A stretch of 60,399 nt of DNA, counting the filler, from Dugesia japonica (Eukaryota): the NCBI GenBank assembly GCA_001938525.1. It is 6 parts of 6 records of this genome, joined end to end, with 100 filler letters (N's around TTAATTAATTAA, not from the genome) between each part and the next. Parts side by side here need not be neighbours in the genome. Positions count along the whole stretch, not along the records: positions 38,860 to 51,840 come from MQRL01639370.1; 5 more parts are not named here. One strand, given 5' to 3'. Positions 2,783 through 49,380 of this stretch are shown piece by piece (positions within the stretch are counted from its first letter, which is position 1; the number at the start of each line of letters is the position of its first letter). The translations under genes and the position numbers were made by a program. The notes beneath the pieces were generated by a model. It was not told where the DNA came from. It ran no database searches and was given only the letters and a program-made list of their open reading frames with translations.

Positions 2783-3206
2783 AATTATTTTAGATAATGG
2801 CATATCACCACAGGAATTGAATTTTTTCAAATATTTTTCCAGATCAAAATCACCTAACTCAAAAACTAAGTCCATGCACATTTTACCATCGATTTTATTC
2901 AGTACAACATCAAAAAGTCTAAATTTGCGTAAATAAATTAAATAGAAATAAAATTCACTTGACTATGTTTCTATTGTCATACAAATTTAATTTTTTTAAT
3001 GCGCATAATTCTCTGTGAGTACTTAAAGGGATATTATTATTACCATCCTTATCTGTGATAAAAATTCGTTTTAGAGCGATATTTACCCCATCATCTTCAC
3101 GTAAACCTTTATAGACAACACCATATGCGCCAGATCCTATTTCTTCAGATAAGCGATATTTTGTTATAGGAGGTAATAAGAAATTTGTAATACTAGAATT
3201 TGACAT
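2783..3206 (-). CDS. CDK4/6-like cyclin-dependent kinase, first two exons (3206-2959, 2918-2783); remainder not found
   Basis: Contains IGSGAYGVVYK, IALK and PLSTHRE (PLSTIRE-like). A 40-nt GT-AG intron (2958-2919) splices in frame to KLFDVV...LVFELGDFDLEKYL. The next donor, GTAAGC, is at 2782. Confidence 0.8.
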
Positions 3207-3667
3207 GAAATATTTAAAATTTTGTCAATTCAAAAAATTGCTAAATATTTATTATTAAAACTAATTATGCTTCATAATTGAAATTCAATAAATTAAATTT
3301 GAAAAATTATTTCAATAAATTTATTTAATCTTTAACTTCACTTAATATCATTAAATGAAGATTCTAATGCAGTAGCTTAGACATGGAAAAATAATACTCT
3401 GATAATTATTGAAAAACCAATATAATTAACTTCAGCTTAAATGTTCTAATTAAAATCAATTATTTGAAAAATAATATATTAAAAAAAGCGTAATTTTCGA
3501 AAAATTTGTTGTAATTGTATTCTTTACTTCTTTAAAACTCTTGCAAATTCGTCGAAATATTGTGAAAATATTATCGAAATACAAAAGAATGACTTATTGT
3601 TAACTCAAATTGCTACAATTTACTATAAGATTGTTTAAATAATCTCATTTTTTTTGTTAAATTTATC

Positions 3668-38859: not shown

Positions 38860-40524
38860 TACCATATCTATTTTTTTAAATTTATGCCCTTAAGTTCATA
38901 TAACGCCATTTAAATAAAGAAGTAGCTTTATTAATGAATCTTGTTAACTTATTAAACCATACTTTAATTTTATATTTTGGAGCTCTAATAATGTACTATA
39001 TAAAAGTCTTGTCAAGAGTTAATTGGATTTACGAAGAGTTTGATTTGAAGATAAAGGATTATATTTCAAAGTTTCCAAGTAGATCAAGCTGAGTTTGAGT
39101 TTAGCTTCTTCTAAACGGACCTTAACCTGACATCGGAGTCAGGTTACATTATTAGTCAAGCAGAAAATGTATCACCTTTAAAAATTTAAATATCGGCCTA
39201 TTTATCCATTAAGTAGCAGTAACAGTATATTAACTTCAATTAACATTGAATTAATAACAGATTTATTTGATTATGATTTTCTTTTAATGGCAAAAAACAA
39301 ATTATTTTATAATTAAATTTTAAAATAAAATTTATCATATTTTTTTAAATCTCATGTTGAAATGACTTAACATTGCAAAGTTTCAAAATAAATTACTTAT
39401 TATGAAAATGGGTATATTGGTTCTAATGAAAGTAGTGTTAAATTATTTAACAATAATTTAAAAATTTAGAAAGTGAAGTGCATAAGGTATTTTCTTCTGA
39501 TAATATTGTTTTTCTGGAAAAAATATTGTAAACTAATAAATTGAGAAATAAAAATAATTATTCCGCTATCTATTGTTATTATAGAAAACTATCAGCATAA
39601 TTTTATTAAAATACAGTTCCTACACTTTCGATTCATGAACATAGGAATCGAACCATCACTAATTCATAAAAAACAAAGGATTTATAATGTTTATTTTTAT
39701 AGAAATTACATGAAGTTAAGATACATGTAATCACAAATGTTCGAAATGATTTACCTTTATTGGCAAGGCATTTTTAAGACGTTTTATCCAATTTTTAGAA
39801 GCCTTCTGTATGACCTTCTGACTGATATTATTCCATGCTTTTGTTAGAACCAGTTTAAGTTCATCAATCGTGTTCACTTCACCTTATGCAATCAATTTTT
39901 TTATTTTCTATTTCAATCGACCTGTTTCCTTCTTTTAGCAACTGTTGATGCATCTGTCTTCAAGCGACAACATAACGAATAGAATTGATTTTCTGATATC
40001 GGTTGAAAATACTTCGACATTTTTAAAATTCCCATGTACAGTGTTCTCGTTTGAATAATATAATGACTTCTCTCTGGAAATTCATAATTTGAGAAGCCAC
40101 TTGGTTTTAATATAAAAATTCTAAAAATATAAAAACAATTTCACATTAAAAAGATTTTGTTATGAATTCTTTATACTAATAGGATTTATTTACTGTATAA
40201 CTGAAGAAATAACAGAAATCACCTCAAGAATATATTCTCTTATATGATTTTATTACAGCACTACAAACTAACTCCCAATTCTTAATATTGAACATATACA
40301 ATTAGATCCTGATAAGTTTTTTCTGCAACGATGTGATCACAAATAGTCGCCTAAAGTCTATATAATCCCTTGTTTACGAAGTTTTGTCGATCATTAGGTA
40401 TATTACTTTGTAAATCTATTAATTGATTAATATGTTATAAAACTTGAAAATATTCTTATGCAAAATAAAAATAAAAACCATTACAAAATAAACAAAAATT
40501 AATAACAAAAAAAATTATACATTA

Positions 40525-42140
40525 TCAACCATAAAATTTTTGGTCCTGAAGAGGACCTTTAATCGTTCTCATAAATGATATTGTTTCATAATTAACAATG
40601 TCTTCCATTTGCAGTATAATTCTTTGGGAACATTTAAAAACAGGAACATATTTTTTCTTAAGATTCAATCTGTAAATTATCATAAAATACCATTNNNNNN
40701 NNNNNNNNNNNNNNNNNNNNNNNNNNNNNNNNNNNNNNNNNNNNNNNNNNNNNNNNNNNNNNNNNNNNNNNNNNNNNNNNNNNNNGAATAACACAATCAT
40801 AAATTGTGGCCCTAAAGAGGACCATTATATGTTCTCATAATAAATAAATAAATATATATAAAAAAAATTAATTATTTCTTCTGATTTCCACGTGTGGAGT
40901 GACAAATAATCGGTGACACATCCACCGTACTGATATTTATTCGGCCAGATCTTCTCAAAATCTTGCCGAATAGTCACATGTAGAGGACTATTAAAGTGAC
41001 TTAAAGCAATATTTGATTTGCCTATACCTAAAATAAAAGAAAATATTATAAAACTAATATTTATTAAAATTTAATTATTACCATTTCCTCGTATAAAAAC
41101 CTTTGTTTTCCCATCTTCCCAATTAAAATACGGTATCTTCCAATTTCGATTAAATTTAGCAGTTGTAGGCTTCCCGATTTGGTTAGCCAACACAGATTTC
41201 AGCTTGTTATTCATTCGAATAAAATCAAGCGGTCGTTCAGATTCAACAAGCTCCAATCCATCTACTATTGAAAGACTTTCTAAAACACTTGCCCAAAATG
41301 TTGAATCTTCCATTCTTTTACGGTATCCAAATTTAATTTTTATACCGTTTCTTGTACTTCAATAAACATTGCTTAATTTATCGATTTCATTATTTATTAT
41401 TCATTATGCGGAATACTTGAAATCAAAATCATTTAATCATATATTAAATTTTAAATAAATATTACCTTTTATAGATTCAACTTGTAAAAATTTCATAGCA
41501 GATTTAATTGACAAATTGTTTTTGAATGTAATCAAACATTCAATAACTGTCAATTCATCTGACACAGAAATTTCATTTGCTAAGAAAAACTTAGCATTGC
41601 CTTCTATTTTTTTCATAAAAGCATTTTGAATATTGATAAATTTATTTTTCTCTGTTTTGAATATAAAATTTCGGAATCTTTGTTGGTTAGACTCTTCCAT
41701 ATCACTTATATTTTCATTAATTCTAAATAAAAAAATATATTTCAATAAACAACAGTATTATATATTATTTTACCTAGACGGTGTCGCATAAACTGCCATA
41801 TTAGGAGCACATATTTTGGTTGGTGGAACACTACTAAATTTAAATTTTATATTAATTATATAATAATTAATAAAAAAAATATTACGATTTCAACTTAATA
41901 GGAGCATTTGATGTAGTGAGGAGTCGGTTTCATAACATTCCTCGTCAAAATCAACATTCCATATTGCTTCTTCTTCCCTTCCTCTTTGTATCATTTCAGC
42001 TTCTTCTTGATCTTGTACCCAATCCCGTGCTCTTGGTTCGGCACGAGCATTTGTAATGTCCAAAACTTCCCGTCGATCATCATATTTCCATGTCATCAAG
42101 TCTAATTCGTCCAAGTACTTTTGGGTGTTTGGGCTAACTT
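40525..42140 (-). pseudogene. Intron-containing gene resembling CRESS-DNA virus Rep (degenerate HUH domain plus SF3 helicase)
   Basis: GT-AG introns at 41885-41834, 41773-41723, 41465-41416 and 41081-41028. The spliced product includes RFRNFIF, FFLANEIS..IECLITFKN, Y*ST..KFG and TKVFIRGNG|IGKSNIALSHFNSPLHV..GCVTDYLSLHTWKSEEII. Confidence 0.6.
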
Positions 42141-42785
42141 TCTTAATATATACTTTGTATATATAGCAGAGAAATACTATGCTATAATTAAATTTCAACA
42201 TAAAATATTCTGTACGCTATATATATAACTATTATTTAAATATTTAATTTTATATGTAATTATTATACATGTTTTTATTATGTTTTTATGAAAATTTATT
42301 TAAAGCTATATTTTTATTAATACGTGAGGAAATAACGTTCCGAAAAATGTGTCCTAGACTCCTCCCATGTTTTTGAGCGACTTGTAATATTTATATTTGA
42401 AAANNNNNNNNNNNNNNNNNNNNNNNNNNNNNNNNNNNNNNNNNNNNNNNNNNAAAATTTGAAAAAAGTTAAACTTTATTTTTTTTGAAAAATTTTATTT
42501 TTTTATTATTTTAAATGTCCAAAAGCTAGGATTTATATGTGTGTCCAAAAATTAGGATTTTATTTAAATTTGAATTGAAATTTTATTTGTATGAAATTTA
42601 GGACAAAATATTTTTTAATTGTCCAAAATTTAGGTTTTAATTGTTTTAATCTGAGTAGACAAATATTTCTTATTTGTAAGTTCCGAATAATGTGAGGAGA
42701 ATTGAGTTTTCTCTGAGATTGTTGTATGAGTTGATAGTTTCCACAGACTGAAAATCTAATTTTTGATTTATAATTTTGTTTATAT

Positions 42786-42973
42786 CAGGCGTCCGCATAG
42801 ATCATGGAACGAATGGCCAAATTTTGACGAAAAACAATTGATATTGTTTTGCATTTAAAGTCAATAATAAAATACGGATTTTCCGAAATAAAGTGTTATG
42901 AATTATGCATTTTTTTATTTTAATCGCTAGGCCATACTTCAAAATAAAACTGGCAGCAATTTGGGCAATCCTG
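42786..42973. mobile_element. Small hAT-type MITE
   Basis: CAGG...CCTG ends with 8-bp flanks GTTTATAT / GTTTATCC. Confidence 0.4.
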
Positions 42974-45859
42974 GTTTATCCAAGATTTTATAAAATTTAA
43001 AATACGACGAAGATGGTGTCGAATAGTTCGTCTTCATATTATCACAACTTTAATTATAAACTACTGATCATTAGTAGTGGCTGAAAACTATAAACATATT
43101 TCGATAATTTAATTATTTATTCATAAGAACTATTTAATTCGAGTTTAATAATAATGATTTCAATATATCGATAATCCAGTTAAAATTCTGTTTAAATAAT
43201 TATGGGCTAAAAGCATAAATTATGGATTACAAAACGATAGTGCATAATATATTAAATAATTATTAATGGAATAATAAATATTAAAAAATAATGACGATTT
43301 AAATAGTGCGATTTAATTTACATGAATTATATAAGATTAATAAATTTTTTGTAATTTCATTTAAATTTAATTTACGCTGGATTTTCTCGTTTATACACGT
43401 TGCAGGTCACCTATAATTTAAACCGATGTACCTACCAGCGGTTAAAATTTTACTTTTCTCTTTTAACAAAATTAAGATAAAAGTAATAACAAAAATTTCA
43501 CGTTTATTTCATTACTGCCCCTGCAGGTCGTTTCATTTCACAAATAAAACACTGACGCACATATTACAATCAATTAGTCAAACAAAACGACCTGTCAAAT
43601 TAACAGCGAACATTTATTTCTCCTTTTTATTCATTTACACTTTCTTCCACTGGTCGAACTACATCCAGGCTCATATTCATACTACATATTCAGTTCCCCG
43701 ACTTCCTCATCCACCTCGGTGGTGTTGGAGAGAGTTCGTACATCCGATATCTTCAACGATCAGATGGACAGCTTCTTTTTGAGCAGTTTTATCTGTTTCA
43801 TATAAGATTCTCAGATTCTCTTCATCTGTCATTCCAGTGATTTGATGGTAGTATTTTTGATAGCCTACCTTCCATATTTTGAATCTCGTGTCTAACTTTC
43901 GTTTCTTTTTCTACCATCGCTCGTACCTCCGTCCACTCGATGTAATACCGACCCGACTCATCGATGTAGGGCCAGATGTAACGGGGCCTTTTAATGGTTC
44001 TCTTGGTTCTGTGCATCTTCGAAATTCAAAATAAACGACGTTAAATTATTTCAAACACAAACAAAATAAAAGACAGTTTTAGATTTTCCAAATTCGTGTC
44101 GTCTAGTGAATGTCCTTGTTTTAACTGTCTGGTTTTTCAAATGAATTAGCATTTGGAAAGCCAGAAAAGTCGGACGATATCAAACGGAAAATTCCGTTAT
44201 TTATAATAAATAAAATTGGTCGTAGAGATCCCTTTATTATAATATGGCATATTATTTTTATTATTCATTCAAACATTCTGTTCTTATTTCTTGAAAAAAA
44301 ACTTTTCTATAATCCAAATTAAGGTCCTCTACGCCTTTATTTTTTTTAATAAATTCGTTATAATTATAATAATAATGTTGGGGTGAAACACTCAATTACG
44401 AAATAAAAATAGCCAGGGGCCTTGATATTGGTGATCAAGAAGTAATAAAATATAGAACAATCAATAACATTTGTTATTTAGTTAATAATGATTATTATAA
44501 AATCACATTAGAAAATGATTATCACTTTAATAAAGTCAGAATTTAAATAATCAAAGAAAAATTATTTTACGGTGATAAAAACAAGAAAAACATTAATTTA
44601 GAAAAAGTTTTGAAAATCAATTAATTAATTTTGGAAGAAAAAGAAAATTAATTACACAAAAATGGGGTTAAAAAAAATATCTTCGTTCAGTAAAGTCAGG
44701 GGAAGATCGCGAAAGGAAATTTGAAAAGAGAAAGTCACGGGGCAACTAAATTCTGTATCAAGAAATTTCTAGTACCAACTGAAGGTTCGTTAAAGGGGTT
44801 CCAAGATTTGACCAATGAGAGACCGGAAAATAAATAAAAAACAAAGAATGAAAAGTCACCAGGGGTCCTAAAAATAGGTACCAATAAAGAATCTGAAATT
44901 CCTAGAAAAACAGAAAATTTAGCACTGGTGCCAATAAGAATCGGCAAACCAAAAGATAAAAATAATCGGACAATGACAGAAAAATCCTGGTGTCGGAGAA
45001 ATCCTATAAAACTCCCCCTGATTTTAGTCGAAAAATATAAAAAATTGCTAATTTCTAATATTTTCACCGCTGTGAAAGCTATAATATTTTTATAATCAAT
45101 TTCTGTGGAAAATTCGTGAAACTTAGTTGGTAAAATAACAAAACACTCCGTTCGTTATTTACTCTTATTAAATTCCCTTTGCAGAAAACAAATTAGACTA
45201 GAAGTGAGTAAGATGTTCATTTATTGTATTGGTTAATTCATACTATGATTAATAAATGTTCATAAAACATTCCACTTCGATGTGGTTTTTTCCTTTTATT
45301 TGTTCAACGGTGATACAATCAAATATTATTCTAAACTTCACTTAAGGACATAAATGACGTTCGTATAATGTGATATTTTTTTGTATTAGGTTAATTCGCG
45401 AACAATTCTAGGTTAATTCTTGCAGTTTATATACAGTCATGGAGTTCCCTAAACCTCCTCTTGAGTAATAACACAATCCATATCCGCCGTCGTTCGCTTT
45501 TCAAAGTACGCCTTCCACAGCGTTCGCACATTTGCGAGTACAGAATTAGAAAATTTAAATAATAAAAGGAAACAAAACAAAATTTTGATTGAAGCTNATA
45601 TTTTAANNAAATCTCAAATGCGATCAATGGTTAAGTCCAAAACTTATTCTCGCAATAGTTGTAATAGTAAAATTCAATTAAATCATCGAAAAAAATTGTG
45701 ATTAACACATTTTAGGTTAGTGTAAAAGTCATTTCGTTTTTTAATTATAAAAATAAAAAAACGCTAACTCGGCTCAAAATAAATTTTATTAATCCAATTA
45801 AAAACCAACAGATTCAATACATGTCTGCCAAGGTAAAGGTTTGTAGTTTCTTGAGGTAA

Positions 45860-46250
45860 GGTTTGTAAAGCACCTTTCCTGCAGGAAGTTTTTCAGTTAC
45901 TTAAAAAAATGGAAGTCTGTTAGCAAATATTCTGATGAGTATAGGGATAAGTATGGGAGGCTAAATTTCGAAATCCAACTCGTTTAATTTTTGCAGCATT
46001 ATTTGTGCGATATTTAGGCGGACATAGTCATGCAACATTTTTGGTGTAAATTTTGCTTTGGGAAAGGTTTTGGATCTTCGTCGTGGTTTAATCATAGTGC
46101 CGAACTTTGATGACTTCCCAATATTTATTTGTCATTGCACATAATGAATCGATGGAGAAATGGGTTACTGTTGTACAACTGCCATGAAGATAACACTACT
46201 TCAAAATAGTGATTTCATTGGTTTTCGCTCAGGCGGCATCCATTTATTCT
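45860..46250 (-). pseudogene. mariner transposase remnant
   Basis: LSENQ.., PFLHR, PKPFPK, LHDY, MLQKLNELDFEI and PYSSEYLLTDFHFFK (YSPDL..DFHLF-like). Confidence 0.7.
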
Positions 46251-47564
46251 TATTTTTCAACTTCCAAATTGGCTTTAAATTCTGAAGTATTGTGAAATGG
46301 TAAACAATAAGTTCCTCTGTAACTTTTCTGGTCGTTTTTTGAATTAATCAGCTTCGAGTATATTAAATTGACCATTATCAAGGAAATGACGGTACCAGAA
46401 ATTACAATATGATTTCCAAGCACCAAGAGAAGGCGAATGGAAAACAAATCACGAAAAATATTAGCGATTAATATAAAAAAATCAATTTGAAAAAAATAAA
46501 AATGTTAAAACAATTATTAAAATTATAATAAAAGATAATAAATTATTTAAATTTAATTCAAATAATTGTCAAAATAACAAATGAATTCCTCATTTCATAT
46601 TAAAATTAATAGAATAATCAATAAATGTGTAATAAAATAAATGAAATTATTTCAAATAAAATTAATTTTATAATTAATTCGACTAATAGAAAATTTGAGC
46701 TACTCCAAAAAGGAGTATAATACACAAGAAAATTTTTCGAAATAGGCAAGCAAAAAAAATCTCAAAATAAATAGTGGTTTAAGTTAAACACATATTTATG
46801 CTTACAAGTGTAACCACACAATAACGTCAATTAATTTCATTCCTCTTTCAAATTTTGCTGTTTCCGAAGAAAATTACAACTAATTTCATTATCAGAACTC
46901 TTGACACCGGATTCCACCATTCATCTGCTGTAAAATTTCAATCAACAAGTTTATTGAGAAACACAGTGGAAATTTTAATCGATCACATTTCTTTTTCAAT
47001 ATGATCACGACTTGATTAGTAAATCAATCGACAAATCTCTGAACAGGATTTTAAAAACCGACAAGACACGAGGAAATTTAAAATAATGACAAGTTCGTGG
47101 TATGTAGTATGAAATCTACAGAGATTTTTTCAAATTCATTCATTTCTTCCTAATTTACAAGTAATTTCTACATGTTTCAGCCTACCTCAGTCACTAATCT
47201 TACTTAAAATAAATCCAAAATTACAAAATGTACATGAAAAGAAAAATAATATGATGTTTTCTTACTGAAAATAATTATAGTAGTCGTAATGTAAACATAA
47301 TAATTACAATACCAACGTGCCAATTAAGGACCCAAATCCATAAGTCGGGTTACCACAAAGACCCGCTGGATCAAGGAAAATGGTGAACACACGCGGGCGG
47401 GCGTAAGTCATGTTACTTAAGTCATGCCCTAGACCAGGATTATTAAAGCTTGCCGTAGATTCACCTACAAGAAAACATCGATAAAGAAAGAAAACAACAT
47501 AAGATAAGCAAGCACTAAAAGCCTGGAAACAACAAATTTATAATGTGAGTAAAATATACAATGA

Positions 47565-47566
<2 letters not shown>

Positions 47567-47597
<31 letters not shown>
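47567..47597. repeat. (AAT)n microsatellite
   Basis: Direct reading. Confidence 0.9.
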
Positions 47598-47599
<2 letters not shown>

Positions 47600-47689
47600 T
47601 AATAGCTTACCTTGATGAGTATAAAAATATCTAGTCTTGATAGTTCTACTTTTATCAAATTTTAGAATTATAAACACTTGATACTTTTA

Positions 47690-47825
47690 CTAAGACTAAA
47701 ATAATCTATCCTCCTTTAACACAGTCACAAATGGCTAAGGCTATTGGATCTTCTACTTCTAGCTTATCTAGAATTTAGAATGGATTTAAATGCTCCATAA
47801 TTTCATTGTTATAGTATTCCTAAAA
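47690..47825 (+). pseudogene. Small helix-turn-helix protein remnant, probably Polinton accessory
   Basis: PPLTQSQMAKAIGSSTSSLSRI is an HTH-like pattern. The Polinton origin is an inference. Confidence 0.35.
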
Positions 47826-49359
47826 AGGAATCTAATATTAATCATGATGAGAAAGATAAAGTTATCTGTCAATATTGTAATAGGGAATGCATTAATATGT
47901 TTGGTTATATAGTATATCCATGTGGTTGTAAATTATATAATCAATCTATTAATAATCAACCTACTAATAATAATTAATTAAATATAAATCAACAATATTA
48001 TTTATATCTACAATATAATTATTTGGATGTTTTTTATTAGTTCTATAATTATTAGGATGGTTATTATCTCTATAATTAATAGAATTACTATTAGTTGTTT
48101 GATTATGTATTGAAATTTTTGTAATATTCTTAAAATCTTCAAATTTTTTAATGTATTTTTAATAATTAAAATTTTAGATAAAATAAAAGATAAACTTTTA
48201 AATATAATAGACCATAAAATAGTTTCAATAAAATGGGTTTTTATATTTAAAATTAATAAAATTTAAATAGAATAAAAGAAAATTTTTAATTAAATAGAGA
48301 ATAAAATATTTTTAATGAAATGGTTTTTACTGTATTTTTAAATTTAATATTAATAAAATTTGAATTGTTTAAAATAAAATATTTAATTTTAAATTGAAAT
48401 ATTTTACAAATGCTGATATCTGATATTTTCTGCTTTGAATATAGATTTTCAAATTTTTTTGAAAAAAGCAAATTTATGTAGTTTTTTGAATAAAATTTTG
48501 TTATGAAATCGAGTTTTGATATTAATGATCCCATTAGTATTCCAAACTCATCTAACAGTTATTTTATTTTTACACTTTTTATAATTATAGAATATATAAA
48601 TATGCTACTAAAATTATTGATTATTTAATAAATAATAAATATAATTTATGTATGAGTTTATTGGATAATGATGTATTTAAACATGATAAAATGAATTTCT
48701 TTGAAACGAATGAAGATGTAACTAAAATCGATATTATATAAAAATATTTTATAATTTTTCATACCTATGTAATAAGTAATAAACTATATCACTATTATAA
48801 TGAAAAATATTTATATTTTTTTCTGTTTTAAATTTACATTTCATTGATAAATTTCATTAAAAAGAATTTATACTAATGAACTGTTTTAAATTAAAACTAG
48901 ATAATTTATAACTTATAATTTATGTAAAACATTTTTAATATTGTTGGGCTTCGAGGTTTTTTATGTTAATTCCTTTTATCTATTTATTCTTGGTCTATTA
49001 TTTTCTGATGATAATTATCTTTCTTCTAGGTGTAGATACCCTGAAGCCAAGAGAAATTTGTCAACACAATCTATGCTGAGACCACCTACTCCATTATCCA
49101 TGCGTGACTTTGCAGTATCCCGTCATTCTAGAAAGTCTTAATTTTCTCGCTCATTTTTGCTTGATTCCATTAATCTATTAAATAACCAATAAAACATTTG
49201 TTACATTTATATATTTATTTATAACAGTGTCATTATGGTGAACCAAAGATCTGTTCACTCTTTACAATACAATCAGCCTTTTCGTTGATCTTCTTACCAT
49301 TGAAGTCCTTTCAGAGCATCCTGACTTTTGCTAACACTGATGCTTCTCGGTCATAAAAG

Positions 49360-49380
49360 AGTAGATAGATGTGGCACATT
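49360..49380 (+). mobile_element. Polinton-like terminus
   Basis: AGTAGATAGATGTGGCAC, followed by a long G/T-rich non-coding tract like the one after 19125. Confidence 0.5.

What the first reader, a model, noticed from the sequence alone, without database searches (positions are those of the whole stretch)
40525..42140. Spliced, CRESS-DNA-virus-like Rep gene (HUH-like plus SF3 helicase) with host-sized introns, one inside Walker A
Seen: four GT-AG introns of 50-54 nt, the size of host-gene introns here, link ORF fragments that look unrelated in the ORF track. Splicing 41081-41028 builds VFIRGNGIGKSNIALSHFNSPLHV...GCVTDYLSLHTWKSEEII. Knowledge: this parallels the CRESS Rep helicase pattern GxxGxGKT..ALAHFxxPLxV...GIxFDD.SFxHW. 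Upstream, RFRNFIF, FFLANEIS..IECLITFKN and NVY*ST..KFG fall in the order and rough spacing of rolling-circle motifs I-III. The HUH histidines are absent, Walker A is one residue short, and Walker B reads TDY. Inference: an ssDNA-virus Rep that gained several introns and an acidic N-terminal extension, either as a domesticated host gene family or as the gene of an unrecognised mobile element. This copy has a frameshift and a stop near 41390-41360, so it is decayed.
Basis: partly seen in the sequence, partly recalled or inferred. Interest (0 to 1): 0.85.

Follow-up and report, generated by a model that had tools for sequence, protein, structure and literature searches.

The report
Decayed spliced virus-derived Rep gene
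This is a broken genomic copy of a replication-initiator (Rep) gene from a small circular DNA virus-like element of flatworms; its family has gained host-type introns, one inside the ATP-binding loop, and carries what looks like the 3' end signal of histone genes.

Summary
The minus-strand ORF pieces between 41722 and 40864 are homologous to a Rep family. Its only named member is the Rep of the planarian (Girardia tigrina) extrachromosomal virus-like element PEVE. A family profile matches the porcine circovirus 2 Rep structure over its full length (E 2e-14), and the predicted fold of the PEVE Rep matches it best.

The intron 41081-41028 inside Walker A is real. The flanking exons abut exactly on unspliced relatives, and two other copies (L001, L124) have an intron at the same codon and phase.

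The window copy is a pseudogene: three in-frame stops, one displaced splice acceptor, one small in-frame insertion, and one large deletion that removed the helicase C-terminus.

- The piece beyond the N gap is not a Rep exon. It is a second copy of the gene's 3' module.
- The acidic N-terminal ORF cannot be joined in frame and has no homologue.
- Walker A is not one residue short.

New here: a histone-type 3' stem-loop follows the gene in the window (twice) and sits 23 nt after the stop in the intact relative L001. No origin hairpin or recognisable capsid gene is nearby.

The parts
40786..41722 (-). Broken Rep-derived gene, given as one part. It runs from the first base of the exon that carries motifs I-II to the last base read before the N gap. 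It holds an endonuclease-like domain remnant, the central (geminivirus AL1_M-like) domain, the first half of the SF3 helicase domain, and the 3' module.
   Evidence: tblastn of L001-L003 ORFs hits only 41685-40864 plus 40838-40794. Exon-wise matches: E 7e-25, 2.2e-10, 3e-6, 2e-27.
41028..41081 (-). Phase-1 GT-AG intron (54 nt, 7% G+C) that splits the Walker A codons.
   Evidence: The flanking exons abut on unspliced relatives. L001 (1060-1118) and L124 (338-383) have an intron at the same codon and phase.
41723..41773 (-). Candidate GT-AG intron (51 nt) upstream of the motif I exon. It preserves the frame but no relative shares it.
40808..40823 (-). Histone-type hairpin, copy 1 (6-bp stem with one G-U pair, 4-nt loop), inside the 3' module 40794-40839.
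   Evidence: Rfam Histone3 14.9 bits on the stretch cut by the gap. The module is 89% identical to L001 1569-1614.
40695..40785 (.). Assembly gap (N). It was not filled. Continuity across it is unknown.
40459..40576 (-). Second copy of the gene's 3' module. Its hairpin (copy 2) is at 40542-40557 and has a perfect 6-bp stem.
   Evidence: Rfam Histone3 27.9 bits, E 1.8e-4. blastn to L001 1566-1688, E 1e-11. Direct repeat D8.
40577..40694 (-). Unassigned stretch between the gap and module copy 2.
41893..42201 (-). The link to the Rep exons is unverified.
   Evidence: No homologue in Pfam, PDB or L001-L003. The only GT-AG link breaks the frame.

Best explanation
The locus is a decayed nuclear copy of a Rep gene of the lineage of the planarian extrachromosomal virus-like element (PEVE). 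That lineage belongs to the Reps of circular ssDNA viruses: an HUH endonuclease that nicks the origin, followed by an SF3 helicase.

Shown:
- Homology to that family.
- Two spliceosomal introns shared with an intact-looking relative.
- Loss of coding capacity in the window copy.
- Absence of an origin-like hairpin and of any ORF with a recognisable domain (capsid or second helicase) around it.

Inferred: the copy descends from an integrated Rep gene that lived for a long time as a spliced nuclear gene. In the subfamily of the window and L001, the endonuclease catalytic residues were lost while the central and helicase parts stayed under purifying selection. The gene was therefore kept for something other than starting rolling-circle replication, for example as an ATPase/helicase or as an interfering partner of incoming Reps. 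The window copy later died.

Also inferred, with lower confidence (about 0.6): the gene's transcript is not polyadenylated but cut after a histone-type stem-loop, which would tie its expression to S phase.
For: Family:
- The central exon finds six proteins among 1.84 billion (E 7e-25 to 5e-8).
- More distant relatives carry Pfam Viral_Rep.
- P0003 passes the Gemini_AL1_M cut-off.
- The family profile hits PCV2 Rep 7lar_A at E 2.3e-14 over 14-279, and nanovirus and circovirus endonuclease domains.
- The AlphaFold model of the PEVE Rep matches the PCV2 Rep and its ATPase domain best.

Introns. Other copies have introns at other places.

Decay: reading against L001.

Constraint: against L001, dN/dS is 0.11-0.17 for the central and helicase exons and 0.72 for the endonuclease exon.

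No origin or capsid.

3' signal: Rfam Histone3 at E 1.8e-4 in the window and E 0.012 in L001, 23 nt after its stop. A histone H4 gene in an AT-rich metagenome contig is followed by nearly the same hairpin, and that hairpin scores in the same range at 24.4 bits.
Against: - Single exons give no Pfam or PDB Rep hit on their own. A profile of the close clade alone also gives none. The link to classical Reps is therefore transitive.
- Synonymous sites are saturated, so the dN/dS values are rough.
- All Histone3 scores lie below Rfam's gathering score of 34.
- The flanks of the hairpin resemble the H4-linked module only modestly without gaps: 19, 17 and 13 of 40 letters, against a null mean of 11.6.
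- L003, an intact-looking relative, has no such hairpin and has an AATAAA instead.
- The host is not identified. 'Flatworm' rests on the closest named relative only.
Confidence: 0.85

Rival explanations
1. The Rep gene belongs to an integrated or episomal PEVE/PIVE-like element, that is, a mobile or virus-like replicon that uses host splicing, and not to a host-retained gene family.
For: - The nearest named relative is an extrachromosomal element.
- An integrated planarian element (PIVE) is recorded in Repbase according to PMC3198968.
- Copies occur in several unrelated data sets.
- L003 keeps the motif II histidine and the motif III tyrosine.
- From my own knowledge, not tested here: spliced Rep genes exist in bona fide ssDNA viruses such as mastreviruses and genomoviruses.
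Against: - Within 13 kb there is no origin-like nonanucleotide hairpin, no long terminal or inverted repeats around the gene, and no second ORF with a recognisable domain.
- The flanks are unrelated between copies.
- Intron places differ from copy to copy, as expected of long nuclear residence.
- The window/L001 subfamily lacks the catalytic histidines and tyrosine.
Confidence: 0.12
2. The window copy is still a working gene. A longer or alternative intron skips the stop-bearing stretch, and the piece beyond the gap supplies the C-terminus.
For: - All ORF pieces lie in one reading frame.
- A good acceptor-like site follows the gap.
- The gap could hide sequence.
Against: - The 3' module with its hairpin already follows the helicase exon before the gap.
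- About 25 bases stand where L001 has about 290, so motif C and the arginine finger are absent.
- The post-gap ORF matches no Rep.
- Walker A and Walker B each carry a substitution at a conserved residue.
Confidence: 0.03
3. The hairpin is not a histone-type processing signal. It is an unrelated conserved hairpin, for example a piece of a repeat family or a transcription or DNA-level signal, that only resembles the histone stem-loop.
For: - All scores are below Rfam's gathering score.
- The same hairpin with near-identical flanks ends several non-histone ORFs in metagenome contigs, which could mark a repeat family.
- Folding energy is not better than that of shuffles (z -1.1 to -1.4).
Against: - The hairpin has the 6-bp stem and 4-nt loop geometry, with GG at the base and U-A at the top.
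- It lies 23 nt after the stop in L001 and 45 nt after the stop of an H4 gene.
- The three Rep-linked copies differ only by changes that keep pairing through G-U.
Confidence: 0.3
4. The region is an ordinary host gene, and the likeness to Rep is chance. An example is the weak glutathione S-transferase C-terminal match of one exon.
For: PDB 1yq1 at E 0.0025 for the motif I-II exon.
Against: - The same exon matches Rep relatives much better (tblastn E 5e-14 to L001; BLASTP 3e-6 to P0006).
- It is collinear with the other exons along Rep.
- Pfam GST models do not hit it.
Confidence: 0.01

Closest known systems
[quoted passage not shown] 2002, cited in PMC3198968)
   Same: It is the only named member of the family found with the window's own exon (44% identity over the central domain). 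The order is the same: motif II, motif III, central domain, Walker A/B, motif C, arginine pair.
   Different: The PEVE Rep is an uninterrupted ORF on an extrachromosomal element and keeps the motif II histidine and motif III tyrosine. The window copy is chromosomal, spliced, lacks those residues and is broken. The PEVE DNA was not fetched, because it is an animal virus-like element, so its 3' flank could not be compared.
Rep of circoviruses, nanoviruses and geminiviruses (CRESS-DNA viruses), e.g. PCV2 Rep, PDB 7lar / 8xms
   Same: HUH endonuclease plus SF3 helicase architecture. The family profile matches at E 2.3e-14 over the full length, and the fold search puts it top. The central domain matches Gemini_AL1_M.
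   Different: Identity is only 19-23% at the structure level. The window/L001 subfamily has lost the catalytic endonuclease residues. There is no origin and no capsid gene nearby.
Endogenous Rep-like sequences of circular ssDNA viruses in eukaryote genomes (Liu et al. 2011, PMC3198968), including the integrated planarian element PIVE of Repbase
   Same: A virus-derived Rep sequence fixed in an animal genome, often decayed.
   Different: That paper does not mention introns (0 occurrences). It discusses PIVE and PEVE for their parvovirus NS1-like helicase, not for the circovirus-like Rep. It describes no histone-type 3' end.
Histone mRNA 3' stem-loop (Rfam RF00032)
   Same: A 6-bp stem and 4-nt loop, with the A-rich 5' flank in copy 2. 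It lies a short way after the stop codon. Scores of 22-28 bits equal that of a true H4-linked stem-loop from a similar AT-rich genome.
   Different: It follows a non-histone, intron-containing gene. Scores are below the gathering score. No purine-rich downstream element was recognised.

Membership tests
CRESS-type Rep (HUH endonuclease + SF3 helicase) | Significant profile or sequence match to known Reps | tested here: met
   The match is transitive. Window exons match the family at E 7e-25, 2.2e-10 and 3e-6. The family profile matches PCV2 Rep 7lar_A at E 2.3e-14. Relatives carry Viral_Rep and Gemini_AL1_M hits. Single window exons alone give no Pfam or PDB Rep hit.
CRESS-type Rep (HUH endonuclease + SF3 helicase) | Motif I | tested here: inconclusive
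   A gapless alignment places the window's motif-I-like stretch on that of P0006. The letters are degenerate compared with P0012.
CRESS-type Rep (HUH endonuclease + SF3 helicase) | Motif II: metal-binding histidine(s) (HUH) | tested here: not met
   The histidine column of relatives holds valine in the window and in L001. P0004, P0006 and P0010-12 keep it.
CRESS-type Rep (HUH endonuclease + SF3 helicase) | Motif III: catalytic tyrosine | tested here: not met
   The tyrosine of the family's motif III is replaced in L001 and in the window (reading). In the window this stretch also carries stops.
CRESS-type Rep (HUH endonuclease + SF3 helicase) | Walker A (P-loop with Lys-Ser/Thr) | tested here: met
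   It is present once the shared intron is removed and has the same length as in the family. The first glycine is replaced by arginine and the Lys-Ser pair is kept.
CRESS-type Rep (HUH endonuclease + SF3 helicase) | Walker B (two acidic residues) | tested here: not met
   The second aspartate is replaced by tyrosine in the window. L001 keeps both.
CRESS-type Rep (HUH endonuclease + SF3 helicase) | Motif C and arginine finger | tested here: not met
   The whole stretch is missing from the window copy. It is present in L001, L003 and P0004.
CRESS-type Rep (HUH endonuclease + SF3 helicase) | SF3 helicase fold | tested here: met
   Tested on the closest named relative, not on the window copy. The model has pLDDT 77. 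Top Foldseek hits are PCV2 Rep and its ATPase domain (target-normalised TM-score 0.6), followed by papillomavirus E1 and AAV Rep40.
Autonomous circular Rep-encoding ssDNA replicon | Origin stem-loop with a conserved nonanucleotide in the loop | tested here: not met
   There are ten nonanucleotide-like sites in 13 kb. The best perfect stems are at most 5 bp and made only of A-T pairs.
Autonomous circular Rep-encoding ssDNA replicon | Capsid gene next to Rep | tested here: not met
   Sixty other ORFs of 45 aa or more in the piece give only a TBP hit in Pfam. Capsids of such viruses are often unrecognisable, so this is weak evidence.
Histone mRNA 3' stem-loop (RF00032) | Score at or above Rfam's gathering score (34 bits) | tested here: not met
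   Scores are 27.9, 22.5 and 14.9 bits. A stem-loop 45 nt behind an H4 ORF scores 24.4 bits.
Histone mRNA 3' stem-loop (RF00032) | Position a few tens of bases after the stop codon | tested here: met
   It lies 23 nt after the stop in L001. In the window the stop itself is lost.
Histone mRNA 3' stem-loop (RF00032) | Downstream element pairing with U7 snRNA, and binding by SLBP | not testable with these tools
   A block after the hairpin is partly conserved: 10 of 18 columns are at least 70% identical in alignment A4. The U7 RNA of the host is unknown.

The most novel reading that the evidence does not exclude
The intact relatives (L001 type) are a host-retained gene family derived from a PEVE-like Rep. 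They are endonuclease-dead but helicase-constrained, and they have been colonised repeatedly by short introns, one of them inside the P-loop. Their mRNA ends in the histone-type stem-loop instead of a poly(A) tail. That would make them a virus-derived gene wired into the S-phase histone expression programme.
Probability: 0.3. Interest if true: 0.75.

Novelty: new variant of a known kind. Interest (0 to 1): 0.55.

Why it matters
Endogenous Rep genes of circular ssDNA viruses are known, and a dead copy is ordinary in itself.

Three things stand out about the family this copy belongs to:
- It links chromosomal sequences to PEVE, one of the very few DNA virus-like elements described in free-living flatworms.
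- It offers a clean series of independent intron gains in a gene of viral origin. The same P-loop intron occurs in three copies, and other copies have introns at other places.
- It may be a rare non-histone gene family that uses the histone 3' end signal. That would be a simple way to restrict a replication protein to S phase.

All three points can be tested with existing genome and RNA-seq data.

Tried and rejected
- Pfam, PHROGs and PDB sequence searches with single window exons found no Rep hit. This reflects the shortness of the pieces and is not evidence of absence.
- The GST C-terminal hit of the motif I-II exon (E 0.0025) was rejected, because Rep relatives match far better and in collinear order.
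- The search for homologous proteins with two exons found nothing, because of its length window.
- IMG/VR scans with two exons found nothing.
- A profile of the close clade alone found no PDB hit.
- A DNA-level count of indels against L001 was rejected as unreliable. At 64-72% identity the aligner invents compensating small indels. The break count in this report rests on the single homologous reading frame and on block-level comparison instead.
- My by-eye likeness of the post-gap ORF to the helicase C-terminus was not supported by BLASTP or hhalign.
- The accession search for the SRA/ENA runs in the literature found nothing.
- The hairpin pattern scan of metagenomes gave mostly chance hits in unrelated contigs. 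Only the AT-rich subset was informative, and none of those contigs carries a Rep.
- The TBP-like fragment gave no usable host introns for a size comparison.

Full report
**Scope and rules kept**

- I worked only in 38860-51840.
- The N run 40695-40785 was not filled.
- The splice model was tested exon by exon by reference. I built no joined, repaired or consensus sequence, and the joined-exon search was left out on purpose.
- The DNA of the named planarian virus-like element (PEVE), of its 91%-identical relative P0007 and of P0009 was not fetched.

- In my thinking I walked through the places of the breaks codon by codon.
- They also hold a degenerate pattern of the hairpin flanks.
- The 17-letter degenerate hairpin pattern was written from three tool-given copies.
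- L002, L003, L124 and L125 were looked up before their nature was known. They are unnamed contigs and I only describe them.

**1. The gap**

The last 46 bases before the gap (40839-40794, minus strand) match the 3' untranslated module of the intact relative L001 at 89%. So the part homologous to Rep coding sequence ends before the gap.

After the gap, 40576-40459 is a second, about 80% identical copy of the same module (repeat D8). It matches L001 1566-1688 at E 1e-11.

They match no Rep relative by hhalign or BLASTP.

Both sides of the gap thus carry paralogous 3' ends. Possible causes are a local tandem duplication, a second largely hidden copy, or an assembly join, and these cannot be told apart. 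Frame across the gap has no meaning, because the gap's length is only an estimate.

**2. The observation**

The piece has about 25% G+C. On the minus strand, ORF pieces with 30-47% G+C alternate with stretches of 0-13% G+C bounded by GT and AG.

- The intron 41081-41028 is 54 nt long.
- The intron 41773-41723 is 51 nt long and keeps the frame.
- The third donor follows the motif I-II exon.
- The stretch 41894-41834 is 61 nt long and does not keep the frame between the acidic ORF and the next piece.

**3. What it is**

Single exons hit nothing in Pfam, PHROGs or PDB. The only exception is a weak GST match that I reject.

The 80-residue central exon was searched against 1.84 billion representative proteins and found six relatives (E 7e-25 to 5e-8).

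- The others come from unnamed Logan, ENA and JGI contigs.
- A search with P0004 added P0009 (48% identity) and three more distant proteins that carry Pfam Viral_Rep.

The family alignment A1 shows motif I, motif II, motif III, a central domain, Walker A, Walker B, motif C and an arginine pair, in that order.

- P0003 passes the Gemini_AL1_M cut-off. P0006 hits Viral_Rep at E 6e-4.
- The A1 profile matches PCV2 Rep (7lar_A) over residues 14-279 at E 2.3e-14. It also matches nanovirus and circovirus endonuclease domains.
- An AlphaFold model of P0004 (pLDDT 77) finds PCV2 Rep and its ATPase domain first, then papillomavirus E1 and AAV Rep40.
- A profile of the close clade alone finds nothing, so the link to classical Reps is transitive but solid.

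The window exons fit the family in collinear order.

| Window exon | Compared with | Result |
|---|---|---|
| Motif I-II exon | P0006 | BLASTP E 3e-6, gapless over 74 residues, ending exactly at the donor |
| Motif I-II exon | L001 | tblastn E 5e-14 |
| Central exon | relatives | 59% identity to the best relative |
| Helicase exon | family alignment A1 | hhalign E 2.2e-10 |
| Helicase exon | L001 | 69% identity, E 2e-27 |

**4. The introns**

The exon before 41081 ends where unspliced relatives (P0003, P0004) have the third glycine of the P-loop. The exon after 41028 begins with the next residue.

L001 (Logan SRR27560321, 1758 nt) has an intron of 59 nt at the same codon and phase. L124 (ENA ERZ27292660) has one of 46 nt at that place. 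L001 also shares the intron after the motif I-II exon (52 nt).

Other copies differ:

- L003 has a 40-nt intron seven codons earlier and none of the two above.
- L125 has a 53-nt intron sixteen codons after Walker A.
- L002 has none at Walker A and a 40-nt intron after motif C.

So this gene family gained short introns (40-59 nt) repeatedly.

**5. State of the window copy**

I compared the window copy with L001, whose exons are all open. In the frame homologous to its relatives, the window copy carries:

- three in-frame stop codons;
- one in-frame insertion of three codons;
- a displaced acceptor, which makes the only available junction out of frame (one frameshift-equivalent);
- one large deletion, where about 25 bases stand for about 290 in L001. 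This removed roughly 92 codons with motif C, the arginine finger and the stop.

All of these lie in the central-domain exon and the helicase exon. The motif I-II exon is open.

Conserved residues are also replaced. The first P-loop glycine and the second Walker B aspartate are changed. The motif II histidine and the motif III tyrosine are replaced in the window and in L001, but not in P0004, P0006 or L002.

Nei-Gojobori estimates against L001 give dN/dS of 0.17 for the central exon, 0.11 for the helicase exon and 0.72 for the endonuclease exon. Synonymous sites are near saturation. This pattern fits a subfamily kept for its helicase/ATPase part after the nuclease died. This particular copy decayed later.

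**6. Surroundings**

- Only 40794-41685 matches the relatives. The flanks do not.
- Sixty other ORFs of the piece give only TBP in Pfam.
- There is no nonanucleotide origin hairpin and there are no long repeats around the gene.
- The acidic ORF 41893-42201 has raised G+C but no homologue, and it cannot be joined in frame.
- A methionine codon lies a few codons before motif I in the window and in L003. The Rep frame could start there.

**7. The 3' hairpin**

Rfam finds Histone3 at 40517-40562 (27.9 bits, E 1.8e-4). It also finds it in L001, 23 nt after the stop (22.5 bits, E 0.012), and in the copy cut by the gap (14.9 bits).

The three stems differ only by changes that keep pairing through G-U.

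A scan of metagenome contigs with the hairpin pattern gave many chance hits. Its AT-rich subset included L094, where the hairpin lies 45 nt after the stop of a histone H4 C-terminus. That ORF hits Pfam histone-fold families, and the hairpin scores 24.4 bits in Rfam. A true histone stem-loop of such a genome therefore scores like the window's.

Two caveats apply. Flank likeness to that H4 module is modest. Several non-histone ORFs in those contigs also end in this hairpin.

I conclude that a histone-type 3' end is likely (about 0.6) but not proven.

**8. Literature**

PEVE and the integrated planarian element PIVE are mentioned by Liu et al. 2011 (PMC3198968). A 2019 preprint calls the Girardia elements the only DNA virus-like elements reported in planarians. 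The original PEVE paper is not held.

I found nothing on spliced Rep copies or on a histone-type end.

**Verdict**

This is a real, decayed endogenous Rep of the PEVE lineage. The family's intron history and its 3' end are the interesting parts.

Noticed in passing
L091 4200-4275(-), L097 783-828(-) and 1646-1689(-), L103 371-414(-), L025 16-61(+): In AT-rich metagenome contigs the same histone-type hairpin, with near-identical flanks, lies 25-28 nt after the stop of non-histone ORFs that hit no Pfam family. Either many non-histone genes of that lineage use this 3' end, or a repeat family carries it.
   Followed up: partly
L094 93-346(+): A histone H4 C-terminal ORF is followed 45 nt later by the hairpin. 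The ORF seems to be preceded by an intron-like stretch, which is unusual for a replication-dependent histone gene.
   Followed up: partly
L001, L002, L003, L124, L125: Intron places differ from copy to copy of the Rep family. Six distinct places were seen, with lengths of 40-59 nt. This suggests repeated intron gain in a gene of viral origin.
   Followed up: partly
L003 1170-2015(+): A 281-residue ORF overlaps, in another frame, the long low-complexity N-terminal part of the called protein P0006. A methionine lies just before motif I, so the called N-terminal extension may not be real.
   Followed up: partly
L002 about 3100-3280(+): A Tc1/mariner-type transposase fragment (recognised by eye) lies next to a broken Rep copy, which places that copy in a cellular genome.
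   Followed up: no
window 51552-51767(-): A lone TBP-like fragment (Pfam TBP, E 7e-5, just at the cut-off) has no recognisable neighbouring exons. It may be a diverged or decayed TBP-related gene.
   Followed up: partly
window 39734-39883(-): An ORF resembles the C-terminal end of a mariner-type transposase by eye only. Pfam finds nothing.
   Followed up: partly
window 43417-44031, both strands: A stretch has raised G+C (33-35%) and overlapping ORFs of 60-120 residues on both strands, with no family match. Its nature is unknown.
   Followed up: partly
window 45427-45627(-): An ORF holds two ambiguous codons (X), so there are single unread letters in the assembly here.
   Followed up: no
window 47569-47600: There is a run of (AAT)n trinucleotide repeats.
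   Followed up: no
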